IMG/VR virus record: IMGVR_UViG_3300033997_000092
Location: 62,001-126,000 of that record
Strand: one strand, 5' to 3'
DNA length: 64,000 nucleotides
In this document: positions 1,227 through 27,100 of the stretch, piece after piece
How the letters are laid out: each line of letters begins with the position of its first letter
How positions within the stretch are numbered: the first letter of the stretch is position 1
Position numbers and translations under genes: made by a program
The notes under the pieces: model-generated
The model's input: only the letters and a program-made list of their open reading frames with translations
Databases searched by the model: none
Told to the model about the DNA's origin: nothing

Positions 1227-1697
1227 TCAGTAAGTTTCGATTGATTTGTAGAATTTTTCAAGTCCTTTTAGATTAGGAGAATATCCATGATCTCCGACCA
1301 TCTTGAAGAACTCTGCATTTTTCAAATCCTTCAAAGGATTGTTTTCGCGTAGCTCACCTTTGGGATGAATATAATCAGCGACGAACGTATCCCAATCGAC
1401 ACCATACGACCGCATTTCTTGAGCAAATATAAAGAACTTTTGCCATTGAGCTTGATCGTCTCCGTTCAGGTCAGTCAACGAATAGTGTTGAATGTCTGAA
1501 TCGGATAGTGGTTTAGGATAAACTACGATGCCGAACCTGTAGCGACTCTCAGGAAGTTTCCTTGTTATCGATTCAGGTATATCAGCAGGAGCTATAAAAC
1601 GTGAGTGACCTTTCGGCTGCGTTCCTAAGCTGAAGGGACGCAAACGCATCCCATACAGGTATTCTTTAGCTTTAGCAATACTGACTAATACGCGCAT
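1227..1697 (-). CDS. DarA C-terminal-like domain protein with leader variant
   Basis: YGMRLRPFSLGTQPKG...YRFGIVVYPKPLS...YSL resembles the DarA_C (defence against restriction A) signature; N-terminus MRVLVSIA. Confidence 0.65.
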   Translation of the reverse strand: MRVLVSIAKAKEYLYGMRLRPFSLGTQPKGHSRFIAPADIPESITRKLPESRYRFGIVVYPKPLSDSDIQHYSLTDLNGDDQAQWQKFFIFAQEMRSYGVDWDTFVADYIHPKGELRENNPLKDLKNAEFFKMVGDHGYSPNLKGLEKFYKSIETY

Positions 1698-5036: not shown

Positions 5037-5933
5037 TTATGCACGTTTGGCTTTAGCAAAAGCCGATGCGTCACTTGGACTGAGTGAAACGTAAGTGTCG
5101 CCCAGTTTGACAATAACTGTAGAGCCGCCCATAACACCTTGAGCTTTAACAACTGCTTTTTCGCCAAGTGTATCAGTGAACCATTTAGCGGCGCTGTCCA
5201 GGGCTGCTTCACGGGAAGCTTTTTGGGCATCCTGAATACCGGAAATGATTTTCTGCTGGGCTGCAATAGATTTGATGTGCTGTTTGATAGCAGATTCGGC
5301 AACCATCATTTCTTTTTCAACGGCAGCCGGTAATACGCCTTTGGCATACACAGGCAGCAACAGGCGAACAGTAGCGCTAAGCTTAGAACGTAATGCAATT
5401 TTAACTGCACGACGAGCTAAGTAAGTAGTGCTTTGGCCTTTCTTGCCTGCTTGTTTTGAAGCATCAAAGTCAACAACCTTTGACTTGGCGGAAACAACAT
5501 AATACTTTTCAGGCTGAGGTTTAAGTGAGCTTGATACCAACGATGTAACTTGTTTGATAATCGCCGAAGCTGCTTTACCTACACCGTTTACAACAACAGT
5601 GATAACCAAAGTCTTTAAGTCAGGGCCAGTTTTGCGTTTCTTCGCTGTAACAGTAGGTTTAGCAGAAGCTATACCTTCAATAGCAGTGATAGCTTTGGCA
5701 ACAACACGGCCTTCTTTCAAACCTAAACCAGGAACTGTATAAACCAATTGGGTAGAAGTTTTAGCTGGCTTGACTTTTGGTTCGTGTGTAAAATCCGACG
5801 CAGCTTTTTCTATCTTTTTGGACAAAGCAGCCAGAGCAGTTTGATTAACGAAGCCGTCCTTTGCAACAACTGACGCACTCGTTGAAACCAAAGCGCCTTG
5901 CAATGGGTCCAAAGCTAATGTCACTTTCATCAT
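5037..5933 (-). CDS. Lys/Ala-rich basic protein, putative internal head protein
   Basis: Start moved to ATGATG at 5933/5930 (AGGGG RBS); MMKVTLALDPLQGALVSTSA extended leader. Confidence 0.7.
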   Translation of the reverse strand: MMKVTLALDPLQGALVSTSASVVAKDGFVNQTALAALSKKIEKAASDFTHEPKVKPAKTSTQLVYTVPGLGLKEGRVVAKAITAIEGIASAKPTVTAKKRKTGPDLKTLVITVVVNGVGKAASAIIKQVTSLVSSSLKPQPEKYYVVSAKSKVVDFDASKQAGKKGQSTTYLARRAVKIALRSKLSATVRLLLPVYAKGVLPAAVEKEMMVAESAIKQHIKSIAAQQKIISGIQDAQKASREAALDSAAKWFTDTLGEKAVVKAQGVMGGSTVIVKLGDTYVSLSPSDASAFAKAKRA

Positions 5934-5946
5934 TATTCCCCTAAGT

Positions 5947-5976
5947 AGAGAAGGGTGAGACTGATGTATCTCACCC
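5947..5976 (-). terminator. Hairpin, possible intrinsic terminator
   Basis: GGGTGAGA-8nt-TCTCACCC followed by TTCTCT (imperfect U tract). Confidence 0.5.
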
Positions 5977-5983
5977 AAACAGT

Positions 5984-6040
5984 TTAATTACCACCACCGC
6001 CACCAACACGGCAACGGCGACTATCATATACACCAGGCAT
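5984..6040 (-). CDS. Micro-ORF, 18 aa MPGVYDSRRCRVGGGGGN
   Basis: AGGAG RBS 6 nt before ATG at 6040; TAA at 5984-5986; hairpin directly downstream. Below the ORF-track size cut-off. Confidence 0.5.
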   Translation of the reverse strand: MPGVYDSRRCRVGGGGGN

Positions 6041-6135
6041 AGCCAACTCCTATAGTTGCAGTTGAATCGTTACGCTATGTAACGGAGCCCAACGCTCTCC
6101 TACAGTCTTTAACGTGGCGTAGTGTCCACGAGATA

Positions 6136-6148
6136 TGGATCACCTCCT
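6136..6148 (-). promoter_or_regulatory. Extended Shine-Dalgarno AGGAGGTGATCCA (13-nt complement of 16S rRNA 3' end)
   Basis: Plus strand TGGATCACCTCCT equals the conserved 16S 3' terminus; no ATG at normal spacing. Confidence 0.7.
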
Positions 6149-6170
6149 ACCTTGTGGAAAATTCAACAGA

Positions 6171-6947
6171 TTAGCTGTACTTCTTTTCAGCTTCTTTACT
6201 GACGAAGAACCAAGCTTTACCTTTAATCGATTGTTTGGTAATCGGATTTGTCGAAGCAAACGTCATAACGCGAGTTTTCTTTTTACCTTCAACAGCGTAA
6301 ATACTTCCAGATGACGTCAATTGAGGACGGACATTACGCGCTGCTTTCAACGAAGGCTTGACTGTCTTTTCTTCACCTGCACGTAAAGGCTTGGTGACTT
6401 CAACTGAGAAATAAATGCCTTTCTCCGCAAGCTGCATTTCTTTAGCTTTAGTTGATTGTTTTGCCGTGATAGCAGCCTGCTTATTAAGCTTACTTTGTAA
6501 AGCTTCGCGTTTAGATTGCAGCTCCGCTATTTGAGCATCAAGATCGCGGATAGATTTTCTCACATTTACGTCTTGTGCTTTTTCACCAACAGCATCACCA
6601 AAGCGTATAGCGCGTGAAGGCTTACCGTCGGTTGTTTTTGGAATAGGAGCAGCTAAGAGTTTCGCAAGCTGTGTCGGCGTAAACTTAGCTTCTTTTTTAG
6701 ATCCGACAGTTGTTTTCTCACCGCGCTGCATAACATAGGCCCACTCGGTAGAAACTGACTTAATCGAACCTGATTTAGTCAGCTCGACATCAGTTATAGT
6801 GTGTTGTATTTTACTTTTGTAGAATGGTGAGCCGCGTTTAATAAGTTGGCCTACCTTATGCTCAATTAGTTTTGCACCTATCACAATTTTCTTTGTTTGC
6901 GCAGGAGTAAACCCGGCCGATTCGCTGATCATGACATTGATTTTCAT
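6171..6947 (-). CDS. Basic protein with MKINVMISESA leader and central coiled coil
   Basis: 258 aa, AAGGA RBS, leader variant. Confidence 0.7.
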   Translation of the reverse strand: MKINVMISESAGFTPAQTKKIVIGAKLIEHKVGQLIKRGSPFYKSKIQHTITDVELTKSGSIKSVSTEWAYVMQRGEKTTVGSKKEAKFTPTQLAKLLAAPIPKTTDGKPSRAIRFGDAVGEKAQDVNVRKSIRDLDAQIAELQSKREALQSKLNKQAAITAKQSTKAKEMQLAEKGIYFSVEVTKPLRAGEEKTVKPSLKAARNVRPQLTSSGSIYAVEGKKKTRVMTFASTNPITKQSIKGKAWFFVSKEAEKKYS

Positions 6948-7572: not shown

Positions 7573-8367
7573 CTACCTCGCCTTCATTATTTGGGAATGT
7601 AAGTGTTGGTTACTTACATAAGCTGGATTGTCCACATGGCTACACTCAAAGCCAGTCGCATCATGGCAACGGCGATACACTAACAAGTCCTGCAACGAGT
7701 AAGGGCGTTTACCCAGTCGAGTATGCTGACAGAAGTGTAATGTATCTTGGGTAGTCACATGGCCACAGAAGCTACAGGTGTATGAAGTGTAATAGAAGCC
7801 AACACTGTGAGTATTCACTTTGTCGGTCAGAATTTCATTACACAGTTTGCTGTCACGCGAACGGTCGTAACCAAGTAACATCATAAGCTTAGCATGTTTA
7901 CCATGAAATCCAGGAAGAGCTTTAACATAACTGTCAAAGATAATACCTTTTGCTTTGGTATAGTCTTTGTTGTCATGTTCTTTGTGTGTAGGTTTGCCTT
8001 TGAATGTTTTATACATCGGCATACCATAACGCGGTTTGAAATCTAGTAATTCCCGCACACTCAAGCTATCGCCGTTTGTGTTAGGAATGTCTGTTATCAG
8101 TGCTGGAACAGGAACCAATATGTAGTCACGTATATCAGGACTGATGTTGTACTTCTCAGCCGCAGAAGGAAGCCATGCGTTAATATCAAGCACGACTCCT
8201 TCACCACCGCCGACCATACTCGGTTTGACCTGAATCTCTTTTGAAGTACGAGAGAACTGGTTTAGCTCTACAGCTTTACCTTCTCCGGCACTACGGTCAT
8301 AAAAACTGCTGATGTCAAATGCAGGAGCAAACAAATCACCATCAGCACTACGAGGAAAGTTCTGCAT
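7573..8367 (-). CDS. Putative prohead maturation protease (HK97/assemblin-like fold, Cys/His insertion)
   Basis: PNTNGDS...TFKGKPTHKEH...GIIFD...SVG....CSFCG..CQH...FECSHVDNPA follows the H...SxG...ExSxVxxPA pattern of HK97-type prohead proteases. Confidence 0.7.
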   Translation of the reverse strand: MQNFPRSADGDLFAPAFDISSFYDRSAGEGKAVELNQFSRTSKEIQVKPSMVGGGEGVVLDINAWLPSAAEKYNISPDIRDYILVPVPALITDIPNTNGDSLSVRELLDFKPRYGMPMYKTFKGKPTHKEHDNKDYTKAKGIIFDSYVKALPGFHGKHAKLMMLLGYDRSRDSKLCNEILTDKVNTHSVGFYYTSYTCSFCGHVTTQDTLHFCQHTRLGKRPYSLQDLLVYRRCHDATGFECSHVDNPAYVSNQHLHSQIMKAR

Positions 8368-20901: not shown

Positions 20902-22143
20902 TTATGCGCCGATGCCTGCGCCTTTCTGTAACATCAAGATACGCATGCCTTTGTTCTGAGCGTGGTTAGCTTTCAGAGCTTTGAAGCTGCGGTCTTGTGC
21001 TTCACCGTACTGACGCACGTTAATGTCAGCGAACTGACTCACAACGTCGGCCGATACGTAGGCAATCATATCCAATTCGTGAGGATATGCGAAGCGCTGT
21101 GTATTCAGGCCTTTCATCATTTGGATAACCAGCTTGTTAGATTCGCTGATAGAAACCTGCTGTACCATGTTGATGATACGATTGCTATCTGCTGTATCAA
21201 CAGCAGCAGCCACCGGGAATGTAGGAGCATGGACATCGCTTTCACGTACCACGAAGTAGTAAGCATCGTGGTAGCCGGCTACGTTCAAGCTGTCAGTTTC
21301 ACCGCCAGGTAAAGTTTCTTGCGGAGAAGCACCACCACCGACCATAGAGAATACACAGAACAGAGGAGCTTTACCTTTAACGTCTTGGATTTCATTACCG
21401 ATGATAGTAGCGCCGGTGTCTTTGTTAACCATACGCTGAATGTTCCACCAGTGGAAACGGTTACCTGCACTGTCGTATGCTTCAGTCCACAGACAGAACG
21501 CAATGCCGTGGTCGCTGATAGATAAGCGATATGACAGTGGAACTGATTGACGATCCATTTTACCCGGACGCACGTCAAAGCCAAAATGCTCATAGCGCCA
21601 TGAGTAGTGGTTTGTTTCACTTGGCGGATCACCATCGGCTGTATCCATGTGCGGAGTAGTAGGGAACTTGCCCCAAATATAACTACCACGTGCGCCTTCA
21701 TATTGGCTCAATGTAGTCAAGAGGCCAGTCTTACGGACGTTATTGTAAGCAGGATCATTCGCAGGATCAAACGGCTGAAAGAAGCTCGTCGCTACCTGGA
21801 AGTCCTGACCATCAGAGATAATGTTTGTAGGAGTACAAGCATACCAACGGACGGCTTGCTTGTCGTGGTCTATTTCAATAACAAAGCGCCACGGTTGGCG
21901 TAACAAATAGTTTGCATGGCCTGTATCAGTGTCTTCTACAGCGATAGGATCGACATCTGTTGTAGGAGCCATCAATACTTTGGTGATTGTATCGTCAACA
22001 GTCACTGGACCACCTGACGGGTTAGCAGTACCATTCAAGCTAAGGACTTTAAAGCCGTTAGCTTGCATATCTGTAACCAGCGCAGCAGCCAGAGAGTTGA
22101 TTGACGTATAGTTGTGTCTTTCTACGGCGAAACCCATAGTCAT
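20902..22143 (-). CDS. Virion structural protein (tail/fibre-associated), paralog A
   Basis: 413 aa, GAGGA RBS; shares RQPWR, PLSYxLSxSDHGIAF, NTQR, LDMIxYxSADV and NKGMR with the upstream gene. Confidence 0.65.
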   Translation of the reverse strand: MTMGFAVERHNYTSINSLAAALVTDMQANGFKVLSLNGTANPSGGPVTVDDTITKVLMAPTTDVDPIAVEDTDTGHANYLLRQPWRFVIEIDHDKQAVRWYACTPTNIISDGQDFQVATSFFQPFDPANDPAYNNVRKTGLLTTLSQYEGARGSYIWGKFPTTPHMDTADGDPPSETNHYSWRYEHFGFDVRPGKMDRQSVPLSYRLSISDHGIAFCLWTEAYDSAGNRFHWWNIQRMVNKDTGATIIGNEIQDVKGKAPLFCVFSMVGGGASPQETLPGGETDSLNVAGYHDAYYFVVRESDVHAPTFPVAAAVDTADSNRIINMVQQVSISESNKLVIQMMKGLNTQRFAYPHELDMIAYVSADVVSQFADINVRQYGEAQDRSFKALKANHAQNKGMRILMLQKGAGIGA

Positions 22144-22151
22144 TTCCTCTA

Positions 22152-23291
22152 TTAATTAATACCAGAACCTTGAACCATTAACAAAACACGCATGCCTTTG
22201 TTATTAAGGCTATTCGCGTTCAACGCACGATACTGCCGCGGCTGTCCGAACATCGTGATTGATTGTACGGATTTATGCGACAACACATCAGCACTTGCAT
22301 AGCCAATCATATCCAGTTGGTACGGGAAATAATGACGTTGCGTATTGATGCCTTTAGGGAAGTGCATGATGTAGTTTCTGTTAGGCATCACACCGACTTG
22401 TTGTATCGGGTTAATGAACGGGAAACTATCAGGCGTAAGAGCAACAGCACTTAATGGAATCGTAGGAGCGTTGATGTCTTCTTCACTTACTACGAAATAC
22501 ATAATGCCGTCAGGTACAACAGTATTTGCATCAGCGGTTCCACCGCCGTTCTGGCTGAAAACACAAATCAAAGGAGACTTGTCTGTTACCAGTACAGTAC
22601 CGTCATCTTTAACCAAACGCTGAACTGCAAACCAGTTAAAGCAATCACCAGAACTGTCGAAGTTCTCCGCCCACATACTAAAAGCAATGCCATGATCTGA
22701 AACAGACAAAGCATAGCTAAGTGGGATTGCTTGTTGGTCCGCTAAAGGCGACCAGCATGACCAAACACTTGCTTCAACCTGAGTTGATGTACGCGCAAAG
22801 AAAGCATGTGGCTTAGTGACGCCTGCAGTAGTTACTTCAGCGATATTGTCTTTTGCTAAGAAGCCAGACTGACGTCCAGGACCGTACTCAGCTACGCGAA
22901 TTTCACCGGACAGGTCTTCGATTATCTGTGTTGGTGTACATACCCAAATACGGATGAAATCACGATTCTTTAATGGGTCTTGCTCGTCAGAACCTGAACC
23001 ATCGAAAGCATGAATCACAATACGCCACGGCTGACGACGGCTGTACTCGGGATGAGAAACATCAGTTGCTTCAACAGCAAGTGGGTCTACTTCATCCGTA
23101 GGAGCAAGCACATAGTAGCTGGTAGAGTTTGTGTGATTTGGTGCTGTGCTATTTGCAAAGACAGGAGACCCGTCAGTAGTAGCACTAAAGGCCTTCAGCA
23201 ATTCAAATCCGCTGGCCTTTAAATCTGTCACAAGCTGGCTTACCATCGATTGAACGTTGGTAAGCCCAGTCCTTAAATAATGACCGGGCAT
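22152..23291 (-). CDS. Virion structural protein, paralog B
   Basis: 379 aa, colinear paralog of 20902..22143. Confidence 0.65.
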   Translation of the reverse strand: MPGHYLRTGLTNVQSMVSQLVTDLKASGFELLKAFSATTDGSPVFANSTAPNHTNSTSYYVLAPTDEVDPLAVEATDVSHPEYSRRQPWRIVIHAFDGSGSDEQDPLKNRDFIRIWVCTPTQIIEDLSGEIRVAEYGPGRQSGFLAKDNIAEVTTAGVTKPHAFFARTSTQVEASVWSCWSPLADQQAIPLSYALSVSDHGIAFSMWAENFDSSGDCFNWFAVQRLVKDDGTVLVTDKSPLICVFSQNGGGTADANTVVPDGIMYFVVSEEDINAPTIPLSAVALTPDSFPFINPIQQVGVMPNRNYIMHFPKGINTQRHYFPYQLDMIGYASADVLSHKSVQSITMFGQPRQYRALNANSLNNKGMRVLLMVQGSGIN

Positions 23292-23303
23292 TGTTACTCC
23301 CCT

Positions 23304-24095
23304 TTACTGTAACGACAAGTACATTATATCCACAGTCGGATTAATGTCTATCGGGCTGAGGTTAGTTATACGGAAATGCTGCAAGCTCGATACAGGTTCT
23401 TCCAAGTTTGCAAGTATAGAAAAGCGACGGAACTTAGTTTCATCACCGTTCTGATACTTGATACCTTCATCGATCAAATGAATTTCATCACTGATAAAAG
23501 TATATGGGTTGTTGTCTGTACGAACAGAAGTAGAAAATCCCTCAAGTTTCATATCAGGAGTATTCACTTCTACATGCAATAAAATTACAGAAGGTGACAT
23601 ATCTAACGAAAAGTCATGTGTGCCACCTGGTGCAATTGGATTGGCTGTTGTATATTGTACAGTCGACCGAGTACCTTGCTTTAAGGGCAGATCTTGCCAT
23701 AAAGGTGTAAGGCTAATCGACGTAGTAAGAACCTGTCCTGCTTTCGTAGGAGGCGGTACTATAAAACGTGGGTCAATCCTCAACAGATTCCCTATAAGTT
23801 GCAGTGGGTTCTCAGGTACAAAATCTATACCACCACCAAAATCTAACTCACTCCAAGTTTCACGATCATCCTCAAGCTTATAAAGCAGTCCAGTTTCAGC
23901 AACAGAACATACCATACCAGGCTTGCGACTATCGTAATCTTCAAAGAAAGCTAGATCTTTTGCAAATTGAGTATAAGCATCACGGTCGGCCAGGGTCGAA
24001 AAGACCCTGAAGCCGCCTTTTAAATACTTATCATCAAGGATATAAGGAATCCACTCAGACGAAGGATTTATAAAATCATCGACTATGAGTGGCAT
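23304..24095 (-). CDS. Putative tail/fibre-associated protein
   Basis: 263 aa, AGGAG RBS; KGGFRVFSTLADRDA..RKPGM motif of a type seen in phage fibre proteins; gene context. Confidence 0.5.
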   Translation of the reverse strand: MPLIVDDFINPSSEWIPYILDDKYLKGGFRVFSTLADRDAYTQFAKDLAFFEDYDSRKPGMVCSVAETGLLYKLEDDRETWSELDFGGGIDFVPENPLQLIGNLLRIDPRFIVPPPTKAGQVLTTSISLTPLWQDLPLKQGTRSTVQYTTANPIAPGGTHDFSLDMSPSVILLHVEVNTPDMKLEGFSTSVRTDNNPYTFISDEIHLIDEGIKYQNGDETKFRRFSILANLEEPVSSLQHFRITNLSPIDINPTVDIMYLSLQ

Positions 24096-24106
24096 AAATA
24101 CTCCTA

Positions 24107-27100
24107 TTATTGTACGCCAGAGCGTGGATCAGAAGAACCATAGTTAACAGTGTATGTGCGAGTTCCAGTAAACGGGTTACTCTGACGATACACATAATAC
24201 TCGATTCCACCTACCCATGCAGATATTACAGGCTGACCTGTAGCATCGCTTATAGAGATACCTGCACCATCGAACTGGCCAGCTTGACCAGATTGGTTAA
24301 CGATATACAGCCAACCCCACGATGCTGGATACATCATATAAGCATACAGAGTTGTCGGATCATTAGGAGCACCGTTAACTGTAGTAGCGGTAAATTGCTC
24401 ACCGTTTACACCAGTCAGTGGCTTATCCAACAAGTCGTAGAACGATGCGTCTTGGTAGTCAGTAAGTAAATTGACTTTAGGCGCATAACCCCAACGTGGT
24501 GTAATACCAGCAGGAGGAGTAGTGTCTGTGATATTAATCACATACGTTGCATTCACTGTGGTGCCGTTCATTGTCAATGACGCAGCCAAGTTAGTAGTCT
24601 TATTACCTGAGACATCAGGCAACGTGATTGTAACTTTATCAGCGGCCATTGTCACGCCATTAGTAGGAGCAACAACAGAAGCAGTTAGGCCAGAATCAGC
24701 ACTCACGTTGACCCAAGTACCAACAGCATTGCTTAGGCGAGCTTGGTAGATCATTGTGATATTCTGATTCTCGTCGTGTGTACTTGTGTTAGTCCCAGCA
24801 CTTGGGTTAGCTGCCAGACGAATACGCAATTCAAGAGGCGTGATAACAATATTCGTAATGTTGAATATGTAATCTGCCTGCAGTGTTGTGCTACCGAACG
24901 TGAAAGAACCACGCAATGTAGAGCTTACGTTTGCACTTACATCAGGCAACTGGACCTGAGTCTTAGTAGGTAATGTTACACCGTTAGTAGGAGCGACTAT
25001 GGCCGCTGTTACTGCCGGGTTAGCACTAACATCTACCCAAGTGCTTGGAGCATCACTGAACTGTGCTTGATATACAACGGCAATCGTTTGATTCTCGTTG
25101 TGTGTACTTGTGTTAGTCGTAGCGTTAGGAGCCGAAGCTAAACGGATACGGAACGCATTCAAGTAGATTGTTGTGTCACGCATTGTAACTACATAGCTGC
25201 CTGTTTTGGTTACACCGTTGACAGTATAGCTTGCGTTCACAGTTACGTTCTGGTTACCAGTCACATCTGGCAGATTTAACAAGTCTTTGCCTGTCAGTGT
25301 AGCACCATTAGCTGGAGTACCAAGCGATACAATAAGGCCTGTATCTGATACAGCGATAGGAACGAATGTACCTACAGAATCAGTGTAGTCTGCGGTAAAC
25401 ACTAAGCCCAAGCTTTGATTTTCATCTTCCATACTGGCGTTTGTCGCCGCGTTAGGAGCTTTGGCTAAACGTACCTTGATAGAATTCAAGTACACTGTTG
25501 TATCACGGATAGTGATAGTGTATGAGCCAGTTTTGGTCACACCGTTTTCAGTGTAAGTTGCATTCACAGAAACCGTTTTGTTGCCAGTTACATCAGGCAG
25601 AACGATTTGTTTGTTGTTGCTTTGTAATGTAGCGCCATTAGGAGTACCCAACGTCACACCAAGAGCAGAGCCGACTGTATCAGGATCCACAGCTACCCAT
25701 GTACCAACAGCGTTAGTGTAGTCTACGAAGTAAACCAGACCAAGCGTTTGGTTTTCGTCTTCAGTGCTGGACGAGCCTGCTGAACTTGGATCTTTAGCAA
25801 GGCGCACACGCAACGAATTGATATACGGTGTAGTATCAAGAATAGTTACTGTGTAACTAGCGTTCACTGTAGCACCAGCATTGGTTAAAGATGCTGTTAT
25901 GCCCATAGCTTGGTTACCAGTAACAGAACCTAATTGTAAGTCAGCTACACCAGTTAACACTGAACCATGATTAGGAGTACCTAACGCTGCTACTAAGCCA
26001 GGATGGTTAGTGACATTGACCCACGTAGTAGGTGCGTCACTAAACTGAGCTTCATAGTACAGTTCAATATCGGTTTCTTCATTGTGTGAAGAACTGTTGG
26101 CGTTTGGACCGCCTGCAACACGAATGCGTAATGCAGTAGGCTGAGCTTCAACTTGTTTAACAGTGAACTTCAACTCAACTGTAATATCGACAGTGTTCGG
26201 ATCAGCTACAATACCAGATGCTGGATTGTGTTTGATATTCAGACGAAGGAAACCAGCAGTGTCAGCACTCACATTACCTACAACAACAGGAATAGTACCT
26301 GGCATTGTTGAAGGTGTAGTTCCAACAGGAACTGTAGTGGTAGCTGTCTGCAAAGTTATTGAACGCTCAAACAAGTTGATTGTTCCCCAAGCAGCAGGTA
26401 CGTTAGGCGCTGAGATAGGAGCATGTTGCACCCATTCCTGAGTAGCTGCACTGGTAACAGAATCGATTGTCTCTATCTGGAACCAAACACCGACGTTAAC
26501 AGTTGTGTTCTCGTTGTAGTTCAGTGTAGTTGCATCAGCAGGCATAACGAATGTTGCTGGGTCTTGTCCAGCAGGAACAAGTTTAACATCTAACAAACGA
26601 GGCGGATTCACGTAGACATCACGGCTTCCTGTTAAATTGCCTATACCAGGAACTGACTTGGTCGCAGTAACTTGTACGCTACGTCTGTATGGCCAACGAG
26701 CTTTGTGCTGTTCTGTAGTGTAACGTATGTTCGATGCAGGCAACACGTCACCGCGATAAGCAGCATCAATGTTACCGAAGGAACTAGCAGTACCCCAAGA
26801 TACGTCTGTACCAGGAACTGTATCACTTGGATCAACAAGTGTGCCGTCCTCTAACACAATCCATGCGCCAGAATCTGGGTCACCTGTCTCAGCAGGGTCC
26901 TGTGCAACAGCAAGTGTAGATTCACGTACTGCAAGACTGGCTGCAAGATTCAAGTTGACCAAAGTGACTGGATGTGTATCAGTAACAGTAGCTTCGTTCT
27001 CTGTATAAGAGGCGAACAATACACCAGAAGCATCTGCGGTCAGAGCACCAACAGTAGCAACAGATCCAGCAACAGTTAATGAAGCAGGACCAGATTGTTT

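What the first reader, a model, noticed from the sequence alone, without database searches (positions are those of the whole stretch)
5947..6170. Intergenic module: 13-nt anti-16S sequence, three periodic TAGGAG sites, hairpins and an 18-aa micro-ORF
Seen on the minus strand: AGGAGGTGATCCA (6136-6148) pairs with 13 nt of the 16S 3' end, far more than the RBSs I inspected elsewhere in the window, yet no ATG follows. Only a distant GTG gives a 6-codon ORF. TAGGAG recurs at 6144, 6097 and 6047 (47-50 nt spacing), separated by short stems (GTGG/CCAC, GGAG/CTCC, CGTTAC/GTAACG). The last copy serves MPGVYDSRRCRVGGGGGN, which is followed by an 8-bp hairpin. Inference: a ribosome-binding structured RNA (stabiliser SD, 30S sponge or CsrA-type GGA decoy) and/or a functional micropeptide, placed within the head-cargo cluster.
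Basis: partly seen in the sequence, partly recalled or inferred. Interest (0 to 1): 0.65.

Follow-up and report, generated by a model that had tools for sequence, protein, structure and literature searches.

The report
Masked ribosome-binding site plus pseudoknot RNA
The spacer holds a conserved, folded RNA element, found once per genome in many phages, whose fixed 11 letters match the ribosome's mRNA-docking tail but start no protein; it most likely parks a ribosome at a gene junction.

Summary
The 13-nt anti-16S sequence is real. It is the longest such match in the 261-kb phage genome (next best 10 nt).

It heads a ~100-nt block (window 6165-6063, minus strand). This block is 100% identical, bar one loop base, in relatives whose flanks are only 78-85% identical.

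A covariance model finds exactly one copy in 16 of 20 related jumbo-phage records, including Erwinia phages Y3 and Alexandra. A shorter version occurs in about 40 unrelated smaller phage contigs.

Conserved parts:
- GGAGGUGAUCC, half-masked by an invariant AUCUC(C) (hairpin P0).
- Hairpin P1, with a richly covarying stem.
- A pseudoknot between the P1 loop and a downstream segment, whose sequence differs between lineages.
- In the jumbo-phage form, two further hairpins (P2, P3).

An intrinsic terminator usually follows, then the next gene's ribosome-binding site.

The second and third TAGGAG sites and the 18-aa micro-ORF are lineage-specific, not core. There is no Rfam match.

Best reading, which is inferred: a masked Shine-Dalgarno trap that captures a 30S subunit or terminating ribosome without initiation, and so gates or stabilises the downstream message. 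Ribosome binding and its consequence are untested.

The parts
6063..6165 (-). Conserved core of the RNA element (P0, P1, pseudoknot, P2, P3).
   Evidence: Identical in L006, L010, L012 and L013; L007 has one change, in the P3 loop. Flanks are 78-85% identical. A ~12% diverged drinking-water relative shows no change across 6047-6164. Covariance-model hits: 116.9 bits with R1 and 93.3 bits with R2.
6136..6148 (-). AGGAGGTGATCCA, a 13-nt complement of the 16S rRNA 3' tail. The family-wide invariant part is GGAGGTGATCC (6147-6137).
   Evidence: Unique in the genome. Invariant in 19 of 20 model-aligned members; L182 keeps AAGGAGGTG. Also present in Alexandra-type phages that were found through flank homology. 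Predicted duplex -21.7 to -26.1 kcal/mol.
6130..6146 (-). P0, the masking hairpin. GAGGU (6146-6142) pairs with AUCUC (6134-6130); the loop is GAUCCAU.
   Evidence: AUCUC is invariant (GUCUC in L182). All five pairs form in all 20 sequences with no covariation, as expected if one arm is fixed by 16S pairing. Folding energy is -4.9 to -13.1 kcal/mol.
6113..6130 (-). P1 hairpin. CGUGG (6130-6126) pairs with CCACG (6117-6113); the loop is ACACUACG.
   Evidence: 100% of cells pair, and all five pairs show changes on both sides. Stem variants include CTCGC/GCGAG, CGAGT/ACTCG, TTCT/AGAA and CCAGA/TCTGG.
6100..6122 (-). Pseudoknot. The P1-loop bases CUACG (6122-6118) pair with UGUAG (6104-6100), across an A-rich linker. 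The second TAGGAG (6102-6097) overlaps this strand.
   Evidence: The pairing sequence differs between lineages: CUGC:GCAG, ACCA:UGGU, UACUGCC:GGCAGUA, UACCGCC:GGCGGUA, CUACUAC:GUAGUAG, and unrelated sequences in small phages. Combined shuffle test p about 6e-12 over 32 rows that are not fully independent.
6085..6097 (-). P2 hairpin, GAGC/GCUC.
   Evidence: 94.8% of cells pair, and all four pairs show double-sided changes.
6068..6084 (-). P3 hairpin, CGUUAC/GUAACG, with loop AUAGC.
   Evidence: 91% of cells pair, and four of five pairs show double-sided changes. The AUAGC loop is nearly invariant in the jumbo-phage clade.
5984..6052 (-). Lineage-specific add-on: TAGGAG (6052-6047) plus an 18-codon micro-ORF (6040-5987, stop 5986-5984).
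   Evidence: The frame is kept in close relatives despite 3-nt and 6-nt indels. The peptide is unrelated in L016 and L018 and absent in Y3, Alexandra, JA29 and L148. The same stretch can also fold as a GGU/GGC-rich hairpin.
5943..5976 (-). 8-bp hairpin (5976-5969 with 5960-5953) plus a U-rich tail; a weak terminator-like structure.
   Evidence: The simple terminator scan does not flag it. Y3 and Alexandra-type members carry a canonical terminator at the equivalent place.
5037..5933 (-). Downstream gene (298 aa, no family match), followed by a good terminator at 5029-5009.
6171..6947 (-). Upstream gene (258 aa, begins MKINVMIS). Its stop codon lies 22 nt before AGGAGG.
   Evidence: This gene is replaced by other genes in close relatives, while the element stays.

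Best explanation
The spacer encodes a cis-acting, pseudoknotted RNA of a previously uncatalogued phage family. It sits just past the stop codon of one gene and ahead of a terminator and/or the next gene's ribosome-binding site.

Its 5' module is an 11-15-nt perfect complement of the 16S rRNA 3' tail. This module is partly masked by an in-cis look-alike of that tail (AUCUCC, with a conserved G-U wobble), while GAUCC stays exposed in the loop.

Proposed mechanism (inferred): a ribosome finishing the upstream gene, or a free 30S subunit nucleating on the loop, opens the mask and becomes tethered by a very stable SD:anti-SD duplex. No start codon lies at initiation distance, so translation does not begin.

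Opening P0 frees the C residues it shares with P1. This changes how the adjacent P1/pseudoknot domain folds, and in many members that domain contains or abuts the terminator. Ribosome occupancy would therefore be converted into control of the downstream message: terminator read-through, hand-over to the next ribosome-binding site, and/or protection from RNases.

Shown here: the family, its fold, the invariant 16S complement, and its position. Not shown: ribosome binding, or which of these outputs applies.
For: 1. Selection on nucleotide sequence. About 100 nt are 100% identical, bar one loop base, while flanks are 78-85% identical and the upstream gene is swapped.
2. Structure. P1, P2 and P3 pair in 91-100% of cells, with 13 of 14 pairs changed on both sides; 0 of 500 shuffles reach the observed score. 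The pseudoknot is complementary with a different sequence in about 25 lineages. Conserved G-U pairs show that the gene-sense strand is the folded one.
3. The 16S complement is the longest in the genome. It is retained in members found without using it: Alexandra-type phages via flank homology and L182 via the model (9 nt kept). It is also identical in phage contigs of widely different base composition, which fits a universally conserved partner.
4. The mask AUCUC(C) is equally invariant. It is far weaker than the 16S duplex: -5 to -13 against -22 to -26 kcal/mol.
5. There is one copy per genome in 16 of 20 related jumbo-phage records.
6. Position. The upstream stop codon lies within 3 nt of GGAGG in about half of the lineages. 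A terminator follows in most. In some small phages the pseudoknot helix plus a U-run is itself the terminator.
7. No reading frame through the element is conserved.
Against: - There is no direct evidence of transcription ends, ribosome binding or any regulatory output. The only RNA-library evidence is two 151-nt contigs from a wastewater metatranscriptome.
- The invariance of the 18-19-mer in L088, L148 and the small-phage members is partly by ascertainment, because they were found with that pattern.
- Stop-codon adjacency could reflect genome compaction alone.
- No clear antiterminator pairing was found in the jumbo-phage form.
- In the window lineage the upstream stop is 22 nt away, too far for a terminating ribosome to reach P0 directly.
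- L182 has lost GAUCC.
- Some complete relatives lack the element.
Confidence: 0.45

Rival explanations
1. A ribosome-independent cis-regulatory leader. In this reading the element is a riboswitch-like or protein-binding attenuator, or a processive-antitermination RNA, that governs the terminator behind it. The SD-like block would be part of the fold or a factor's binding site.
For: A conserved pseudoknotted domain directly upstream of a canonical terminator and ribosome-binding site in Y3, Alexandra, AD1-type and JA29-type phages. H-type pseudoknot with an A-rich linker, as in several small riboswitches.
Against: An exact 11-nt match to the 16S tail would be a coincidence. No alternative antiterminator pairing was found. 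Downstream genes are unrelated between lineages (terminase, scaffold, methylase, injected proteins), which argues against a metabolite signal. Several members have no terminator. No Rfam family matches.
Confidence: 0.2
2. A trans-acting small RNA of about 130-190 nt, ended by the terminator and derived from a 3' UTR or its own promoter. Its 5' block would titrate or modify 16S tails (a ribosome sponge) or pair with another target.
For: The element plus terminator behaves as a unit while genes on either side are exchanged. Many members end in a hairpin with a U-run. One metatranscriptome contig ends 6 nt past the hairpin stem (anecdotal).
Against: L148, L221, L182 and the L094 group have no terminator and run into the next gene. 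The phage's own genes use SD sequences, so a sponge would also hurt the phage. A single gene copy would have to match ribosome numbers.
Confidence: 0.1
3. A self-cleaving or RNase-processing element. The hairpin, A-rich linker and loop pseudoknot recall the topology of the pistol ribozyme. Cleavage would create a new 5' end for the downstream message.
For: The topology and the phage intergenic setting. The window's P1 (CGUGG/CCACG followed by UUAAA) resembles the published env25 pistol sequence as I recall it from memory; this was not tested.
Against: No hit to pistol or any other ribozyme model, even at E up to 5-10. The order of elements differs. This reading gives the 16S complement no role.
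Confidence: 0.07
4. One reading: three periodically spaced ribosome- or CsrA-binding TAGGAG sites plus a functional 18-aa micropeptide.
For: Three TAGGAG sites lie within 103 nt in this genome. The micro-ORF has a good ribosome-binding site, and its frame survives indels in close relatives. Short ORFs ending 8-10 nt before the hairpin recur in L016 and L018.
Against: Sites 2 and 3 are not conserved. Site 2 is explained by the pseudoknot strand and P2. The peptides are unrelated between lineages and absent from most members.
Confidence: 0.04
5. A decayed gene junction (stop, SD, lost start codon) or a DNA-level signal such as a promoter, packaging site or recombination site.
For: The same GGAGGTGATCC followed by ATG serves real gene starts in other phages. 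The element marks mosaic boundaries.
Against: The compensatory changes and G-U pairs are RNA-level and strand-specific. A relic would not be kept identical across relatives. The genome's promoter-like motif CTGTAAATA is absent here.
Confidence: 0.04

Closest known systems
STAB-SD and polypurine 5' stabilisers (Bacillus thuringiensis cry3A leader; Bacillus phage SP82 early RNA). Cited from my own knowledge; reviews mentioning STAB-SD turned up.
   Same: An SD sequence with strong complementarity to the 16S tail, with no start codon at initiation distance. It is thought to hold a 30S subunit on the mRNA.
   Different: Those are short, unstructured sites near a 5' end in Gram-positive hosts and act against 5'-exonuclease. 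This element is masked by a hairpin, fused to a conserved pseudoknot, lies just after a stop codon, is often followed by a terminator, and occurs in phages of Enterobacterales.
Ribosome 'entrapment' operators such as the E. coli rpsO (S15) pseudoknot, and ribosome standby sites (PMC5934652).
   Same: SD plus pseudoknot docking on the 30S platform without productive accommodation; ribosome loading upstream of a structured region.
   Different: Those contain the gene's own start codon and a protein repressor, or are unstructured tails. Here there is no start codon and no known protein partner.
Calicivirus TURBS termination-reinitiation signal (from my own knowledge).
   Same: An rRNA-complementary motif next to a stop codon that could tether the small subunit after termination.
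   Different: TURBS is eukaryotic, pairs with 18S helix 26, and the restart codon overlaps the stop. Here the next start codon lies 20-210 nt downstream, often beyond a terminator.
Small H-type pseudoknot riboswitches (preQ1-I, SAM-II/V; PMC11625349, PMC6061858) and the pistol ribozyme.
   Same: A hairpin whose loop pairs with a downstream segment across an A-rich linker, often next to an SD or a terminator.
   Different: No covariance-model match. The SD-like block lies at the 5' side, outside the pseudoknot. Downstream genes show no common metabolic theme.

Membership tests
Any Rfam 15 family (including preQ1, SAM-II/V, fluoride, pistol, twister, hammerhead, EAR/epsC, leaders) | Covariance-model score at or near the family's gathering threshold | tested here: not met
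   cmscan at E up to 5-10 on the window region, on seven jumbo-phage members and on eight small-phage members. No consistent hit appears at the element.
Ordinary translation initiation region | A start codon (ATG, GTG or TTG) 5-10 nt after the SD core, opening a conserved reading frame | tested here: not met
   No such codon follows. Frames from ATA or ATC meet stops after 3-9 codons in L018, Y3 and L182, and shift between relatives.
STAB-SD-type 5' stabiliser | A non-initiating SD with extended 16S complementarity | tested here: met
   11-15 nt of complementarity and no start codon.
STAB-SD-type 5' stabiliser | Position within a few nucleotides of the mRNA 5' end, with a measurable stabilising effect | not testable with these tools
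   No transcript-end data. A promoter-like TATAAATAG lies 12-14 nt upstream only in L221 and L148. No sigma-70-like site precedes the window copy.
Transcriptional attenuator or riboswitch | A structured domain followed by an intrinsic terminator, with a mutually exclusive antiterminator | tested here: inconclusive
   A terminator follows in most lineages, and in some small phages it coincides with the pseudoknot helix. No antiterminator is evident in the jumbo-phage form. Terminators are absent in L148, L221, L182 and L094.
CsrA/RsmA decoy RNA | Several GGA motifs presented in hairpin loops, conserved across homologues | tested here: not met
   Only the first GGA-bearing site is conserved, and it lies in a stem of P0.
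Conserved micropeptide gene | The peptide sequence is conserved among homologous loci | tested here: not met
   MPGVYDS... is confined to the window lineage. Other lineages have unrelated 1-12-codon ORFs or none.

The most novel reading that the evidence does not exclude
Phages widely use an rRNA-complementary, self-masked 'ribosome latch' at gene and operon junctions. A ribosome that has just terminated, or a free 30S subunit, is captured by an 11-nt SD:anti-SD duplex. This refolds an adjoining pseudoknot that decides whether transcription or translation continues. It would be a ribosome-sensing riboswitch, or a bacterial counterpart of the calicivirus TURBS tether.
Probability: 0.25. Interest if true: 0.85.

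Novelty: new variant of a known kind. Interest (0 to 1): 0.72.

Why it matters
Non-initiating Shine-Dalgarno sites are known only as scattered, mostly Gram-positive mRNA stabilisers. This work defines a sequence family with a fold supported by covariation. It has one copy per genome in cultured Erwinia and Dickeya jumbo phages (Y3, Alexandra, AD1-type, JA29-type) and a short form in dozens of unrelated phage contigs.

Its most conserved feature is a masked, perfect complement of the ribosome's docking tail. If the tail really is the partner, the element is a natural device that reads ribosome occupancy at gene junctions. That is relevant to transcription-translation coupling, to the timing of phage late genes and injected proteins, and as a compact part for synthetic biology.

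The idea can be tested directly, because Y3 and Alexandra grow on laboratory Erwinia amylovora strains. It also corrects annotation: Y3 carries a 45-codon 'gene' (gp207) on the opposite strand across the element.

Tried and rejected
- **blastn against GenBank phages.** No match with 900 nt or with the core alone. The element is too short and diverged for blastn.
- **Single-protein locus searches with the flanking proteins and the protease.** These returned only an identical contig. A protease alignment was needed.
- **An ATA-started 28-codon ORF behind the strong SD.** Rejected: stops appear after 8-9 codons in L018 and Y3, and there is a frameshift in close relatives.
- **TTTTCCACAAGG as a general promoter motif.** Rejected: it is single-copy in the genome. 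The genome's enriched intergenic motif is CTGTAAATA, which is absent here.
- **Antisense (+ strand) reading as a 16S 3'-end mimic.** Rejected: conserved G-U pairs fit only the minus strand.
- **Alternative long hairpin pairing GUAG with the 5' arm of P3.** It fits the window, L016 and L018 but not Y3 or L148, so it was dropped in favour of the pseudoknot plus P3.
- **Bacterial genomes.** Nine pattern hits in unrelated phyla all score below 18 bits with model R2, which is chance level.
- **Model R2 on NCTB and four other relatives.** Nothing found.
- **Sequencing runs.** Only contigs were available. They confirm the island of conservation, and two RNA-library contigs lie over 5947-6096 and 5800-5940, but they cannot show transcript ends or strand.
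- **Literature searches.** No description of the motif was found.

Full report
**Setting**

The window is bases 62,001-126,000 of a 261,032-bp phage genome with direct terminal repeats and 43% G+C. All genes around the finding are on the minus strand.

The finding is the 237-nt spacer between a 258-aa gene (6947-6171) and a 298-aa gene (5933-5037). It lies 1.4 kb downstream of a prohead protease (7573-8367, phrog_18299, E 1e-86). A DarA_C protein is nearby.

By protease similarity, the nearest named relatives are phage NCTB and jumbo phages of Yersinia, Dickeya and Erwinia, such as JA29, AD1 and Alexandra.

**The observation**

- AGGAGGTGATCCA (6148-6136) is the only match of 11 nt or more to the complement of the 16S 3' end on either strand of the genome.
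- Among 315 crude gene calls, upstream matches are mostly 4-5 nt and never exceed 10 nt.
- The predicted duplex energy is -24 kcal/mol, against -6 to -9 for ordinary sites.

**Close relatives**

Word search with the downstream protein found homologues at 89-92% and 48-55% identity, and their contigs were fetched.

- In the five close variants the flanks are 78-85% identical in DNA, and the upstream gene is a different one in each.
- From GAATTTTCC to GATTCA (6165-6063) there is a single change, and it lies in a hairpin loop.
- A ~12% diverged contig from drinking water likewise shows no difference across 6047-6164.
- The third TAGGAG reads TGGGAG in these relatives.
- The micro-ORF keeps its frame through 3-nt and 6-nt indels.
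- The distant homologues of the gene have only a 50-nt spacer and no element.

**Distant members and the fold**

Exact-word scans brought in copies from other jumbo-phage contigs and from a 2.6-kb metagenome contig. One of these proved to be Erwinia phage vB_EamM_Y3. Flank homology then showed the element in Alexandra and in pEa_SNUABM_2 and _35.

A covariance model built from five sequences (R1) found exactly one hit per record in 16 of 20 related jumbo-phage records. These include records whose lengths equal those of Dickeya phages JA29, JA33 and AD1. It also found a diverged member, L182, close to that phage's protease. The window's own genome has one copy.

On the 20-sequence alignment:

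| Helix | Cells paired | Pairs changed on both sides |
|---|---|---|
| P1 | 100% | 5 of 5 |
| P2 | 94.8% | 4 of 4 |
| P3 | 91% | 4 of 5 |

None of 500 shuffles reached the observed covariation score, and sliding the partner columns collapsed the pairing.

This alignment was fitted to P1-P3, so it leans towards them. It was not fitted to P0 or to the pseudoknot.

The 8-nt loop of P1 is complementary to a segment 9-11 nt downstream. The pairing changes together in different lineages:
- CUAC:GUAG in most members
- CUGC:GCAG
- ACCA:UGGU
- UACUGCC:GGCAGUA against UACCGCC:GGCGGUA in two sister phages
- CUACUAC:GUAGUAG in L182

This makes an H-type pseudoknot with an A-rich linker. The conserved G-U pairs fit only the gene-sense strand.

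**The 16S-complementary block**

GGAGGUGAUCC is invariant in every true member except L182, which keeps AAGGAGGUG. Two or three variable bases follow, then an invariant AUCUC(C).

AUCUC(C) pairs with GGAGGU, including a conserved G-U, to form hairpin P0. The bases GAUCC stay in the loop.

P0 never covaries. That is expected if one arm is fixed by an outside partner and the other arm must match it. P0 is worth -5 to -13 kcal/mol, against -22 to -26 for the duplex with 16S.

Some members extend the match to 14-15 nt (UAAGGAGGUGAUCC[A] in JA29 and L016).

Part of this invariance is by ascertainment, since several members were found with the word itself. The Alexandra group and L182 are free of that bias. 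The model-found members are only partly free of it, because R1 includes the block.

**A wider family**

The last viral scan, with GGAGGTGATCCNNATCTCC, returned 61 loci where about 7 are expected by chance. About 40 of them are smaller phage contigs of very different base composition.

Nearly all show the same compact plan:
- P0
- P1, usually CC(C)...GGG, sharing its first C residues with the 3' arm of P0
- a UUAW linker
- a segment complementary to the P1 loop, with a different sequence in each lineage

In several (the L273 group, L277, L031) that last helix plus a U-run is itself an intrinsic terminator. In L157 the terminator starts inside the 3' arm of P0.

Flanking genes are varied: holin, DNA-binding protein, terminase large subunit, scaffold, methyltransferase. 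The upstream stop codon lies within 3 nt of GGAGG in about half of the lineages.

Pattern hits in bacterial genomes are at chance level. No Rfam family matches any form. I found no description of the motif in the searchable literature.

**What is not core**

- The second TAGGAG is the pseudoknot strand plus the start of P2; it reads UAGUAG or UAGAAG elsewhere.
- The third TAGGAG is the ribosome-binding site of a lineage-specific micro-ORF.
- Unrelated short ORFs ending 8-10 nt before a hairpin occur in L016 and L018. L182 has a start-stop or a 12-codon ORF. Y3, Alexandra, JA29, L148 and L221 have none.
- In Y3 and Alexandra-type phages the element lies 65 kb from the protease, between paralogous genes whose products begin MKI/MEI..ISLS. 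A canonical terminator and the next ribosome-binding site follow it directly.
- In JA29 the next gene encodes an ART-PolyVal ADP-ribosyltransferase.
- In the window's clade the element stays with its downstream gene. In the Alexandra clade it stays with its upstream gene. So the element, with or without a terminator, behaves as a unit of its own.

**Interpretation**

The simplest account of an 11-nt block that is identical across such different phages, together with an equally fixed partial mask, is pairing with the near-universal 16S tail. I put about 0.7 on that.

There is no start codon at initiation distance, and complementarity this long is known, from my own knowledge, to impede initiation. 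So the likely role is capture rather than initiation.

I favour a cis-acting latch. The mask keeps the site closed until a terminating ribosome or a 30S subunit opens it. Capture then changes P0/P1/pseudoknot folding next to the terminator or the next ribosome-binding site.

Which output follows (read-through, hand-over or stabilisation) is not decided by my data.

**Limits**

- The host of the window phage is unknown.
- There are no transcript-end or footprint data.
- Gene calls used for the statistics are crude.
- Rows in the combined pseudoknot test are not independent.
- Identification of some IMG/VR records with named phages rests on record length, except for Y3 and the Alexandra-type phages, which were confirmed by BLAST.

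Noticed in passing
window 42351, 63788, 34930 (minus strand); many more genome-wide: The motif (T)CTGTAAATA occurs in 14 intergenic gaps where 0.7 are expected. It often sits directly after terminators and 30-45 nt before start codons, so it is probably a phage promoter element. It is absent in front of the finding.
   Followed up: partly
window 21200-26500, + strand: TAGGAG occurs 37 times on the + strand of the window against about 15 expected. The copies are concentrated at 21-26 kb.
   Followed up: no
window 6171-6947 and 5037-5933; L017 4501-8898; L018 75-4675; L215 3088-4983: Arrays of paralogous genes whose products begin MKI.V.IS.S, MEI..SLS or similar. This is probably a capsid-targeting or propeptide signal of packaged (injected) proteins. 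The element always precedes one of them in the jumbo-phage clade.
   Followed up: partly
window 1227-1697 (minus strand); L225 798-1475 (minus strand): A DarA_C domain protein (E 3e-12) lies in the window. An ART-PolyVal ADP-ribosyltransferase (E 2e-27) lies directly downstream of the element in the record matching Dickeya phage JA29.
   Followed up: partly
L215 3669-3806 (Erwinia phage Y3, gp207): The deposited annotation places a 45-codon hypothetical gene on the opposite strand, across the element and its terminator. It is probably spurious.
   Followed up: no
window 5947-6096 and 5800-5940: Two 151-nt contigs from a wastewater metatranscriptome (relatives, 93-95% alike) abut the hairpin and ribosome-binding-site boundary. 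One ends 6 nt past the hairpin stem and the other starts 7 nt before the ATG. This is anecdotal and cannot show true RNA ends.
   Followed up: partly
genome C1:134156 (outside the window): A real gene start uses GAGGTGATCC followed by T and ATG. This is the second-longest anti-16S match in the genome. Other phages likewise have GGAGGTGATCCATATG gene starts.
   Followed up: no
L246 1001-1219: A sub-threshold group I intron match (31.6 bits, E 3e-4) in an unrelated 20-kb phage contig that also carries the short form of the motif.
   Followed up: no
L157 and L168, about 30 nt upstream of the motif: Both carry CGCCTCCACCA about 20 nt before GAAAGGAGG. This looks like the 3' end of a tRNA gene, so in these contigs the motif follows a tRNA-like end.
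   Followed up: no
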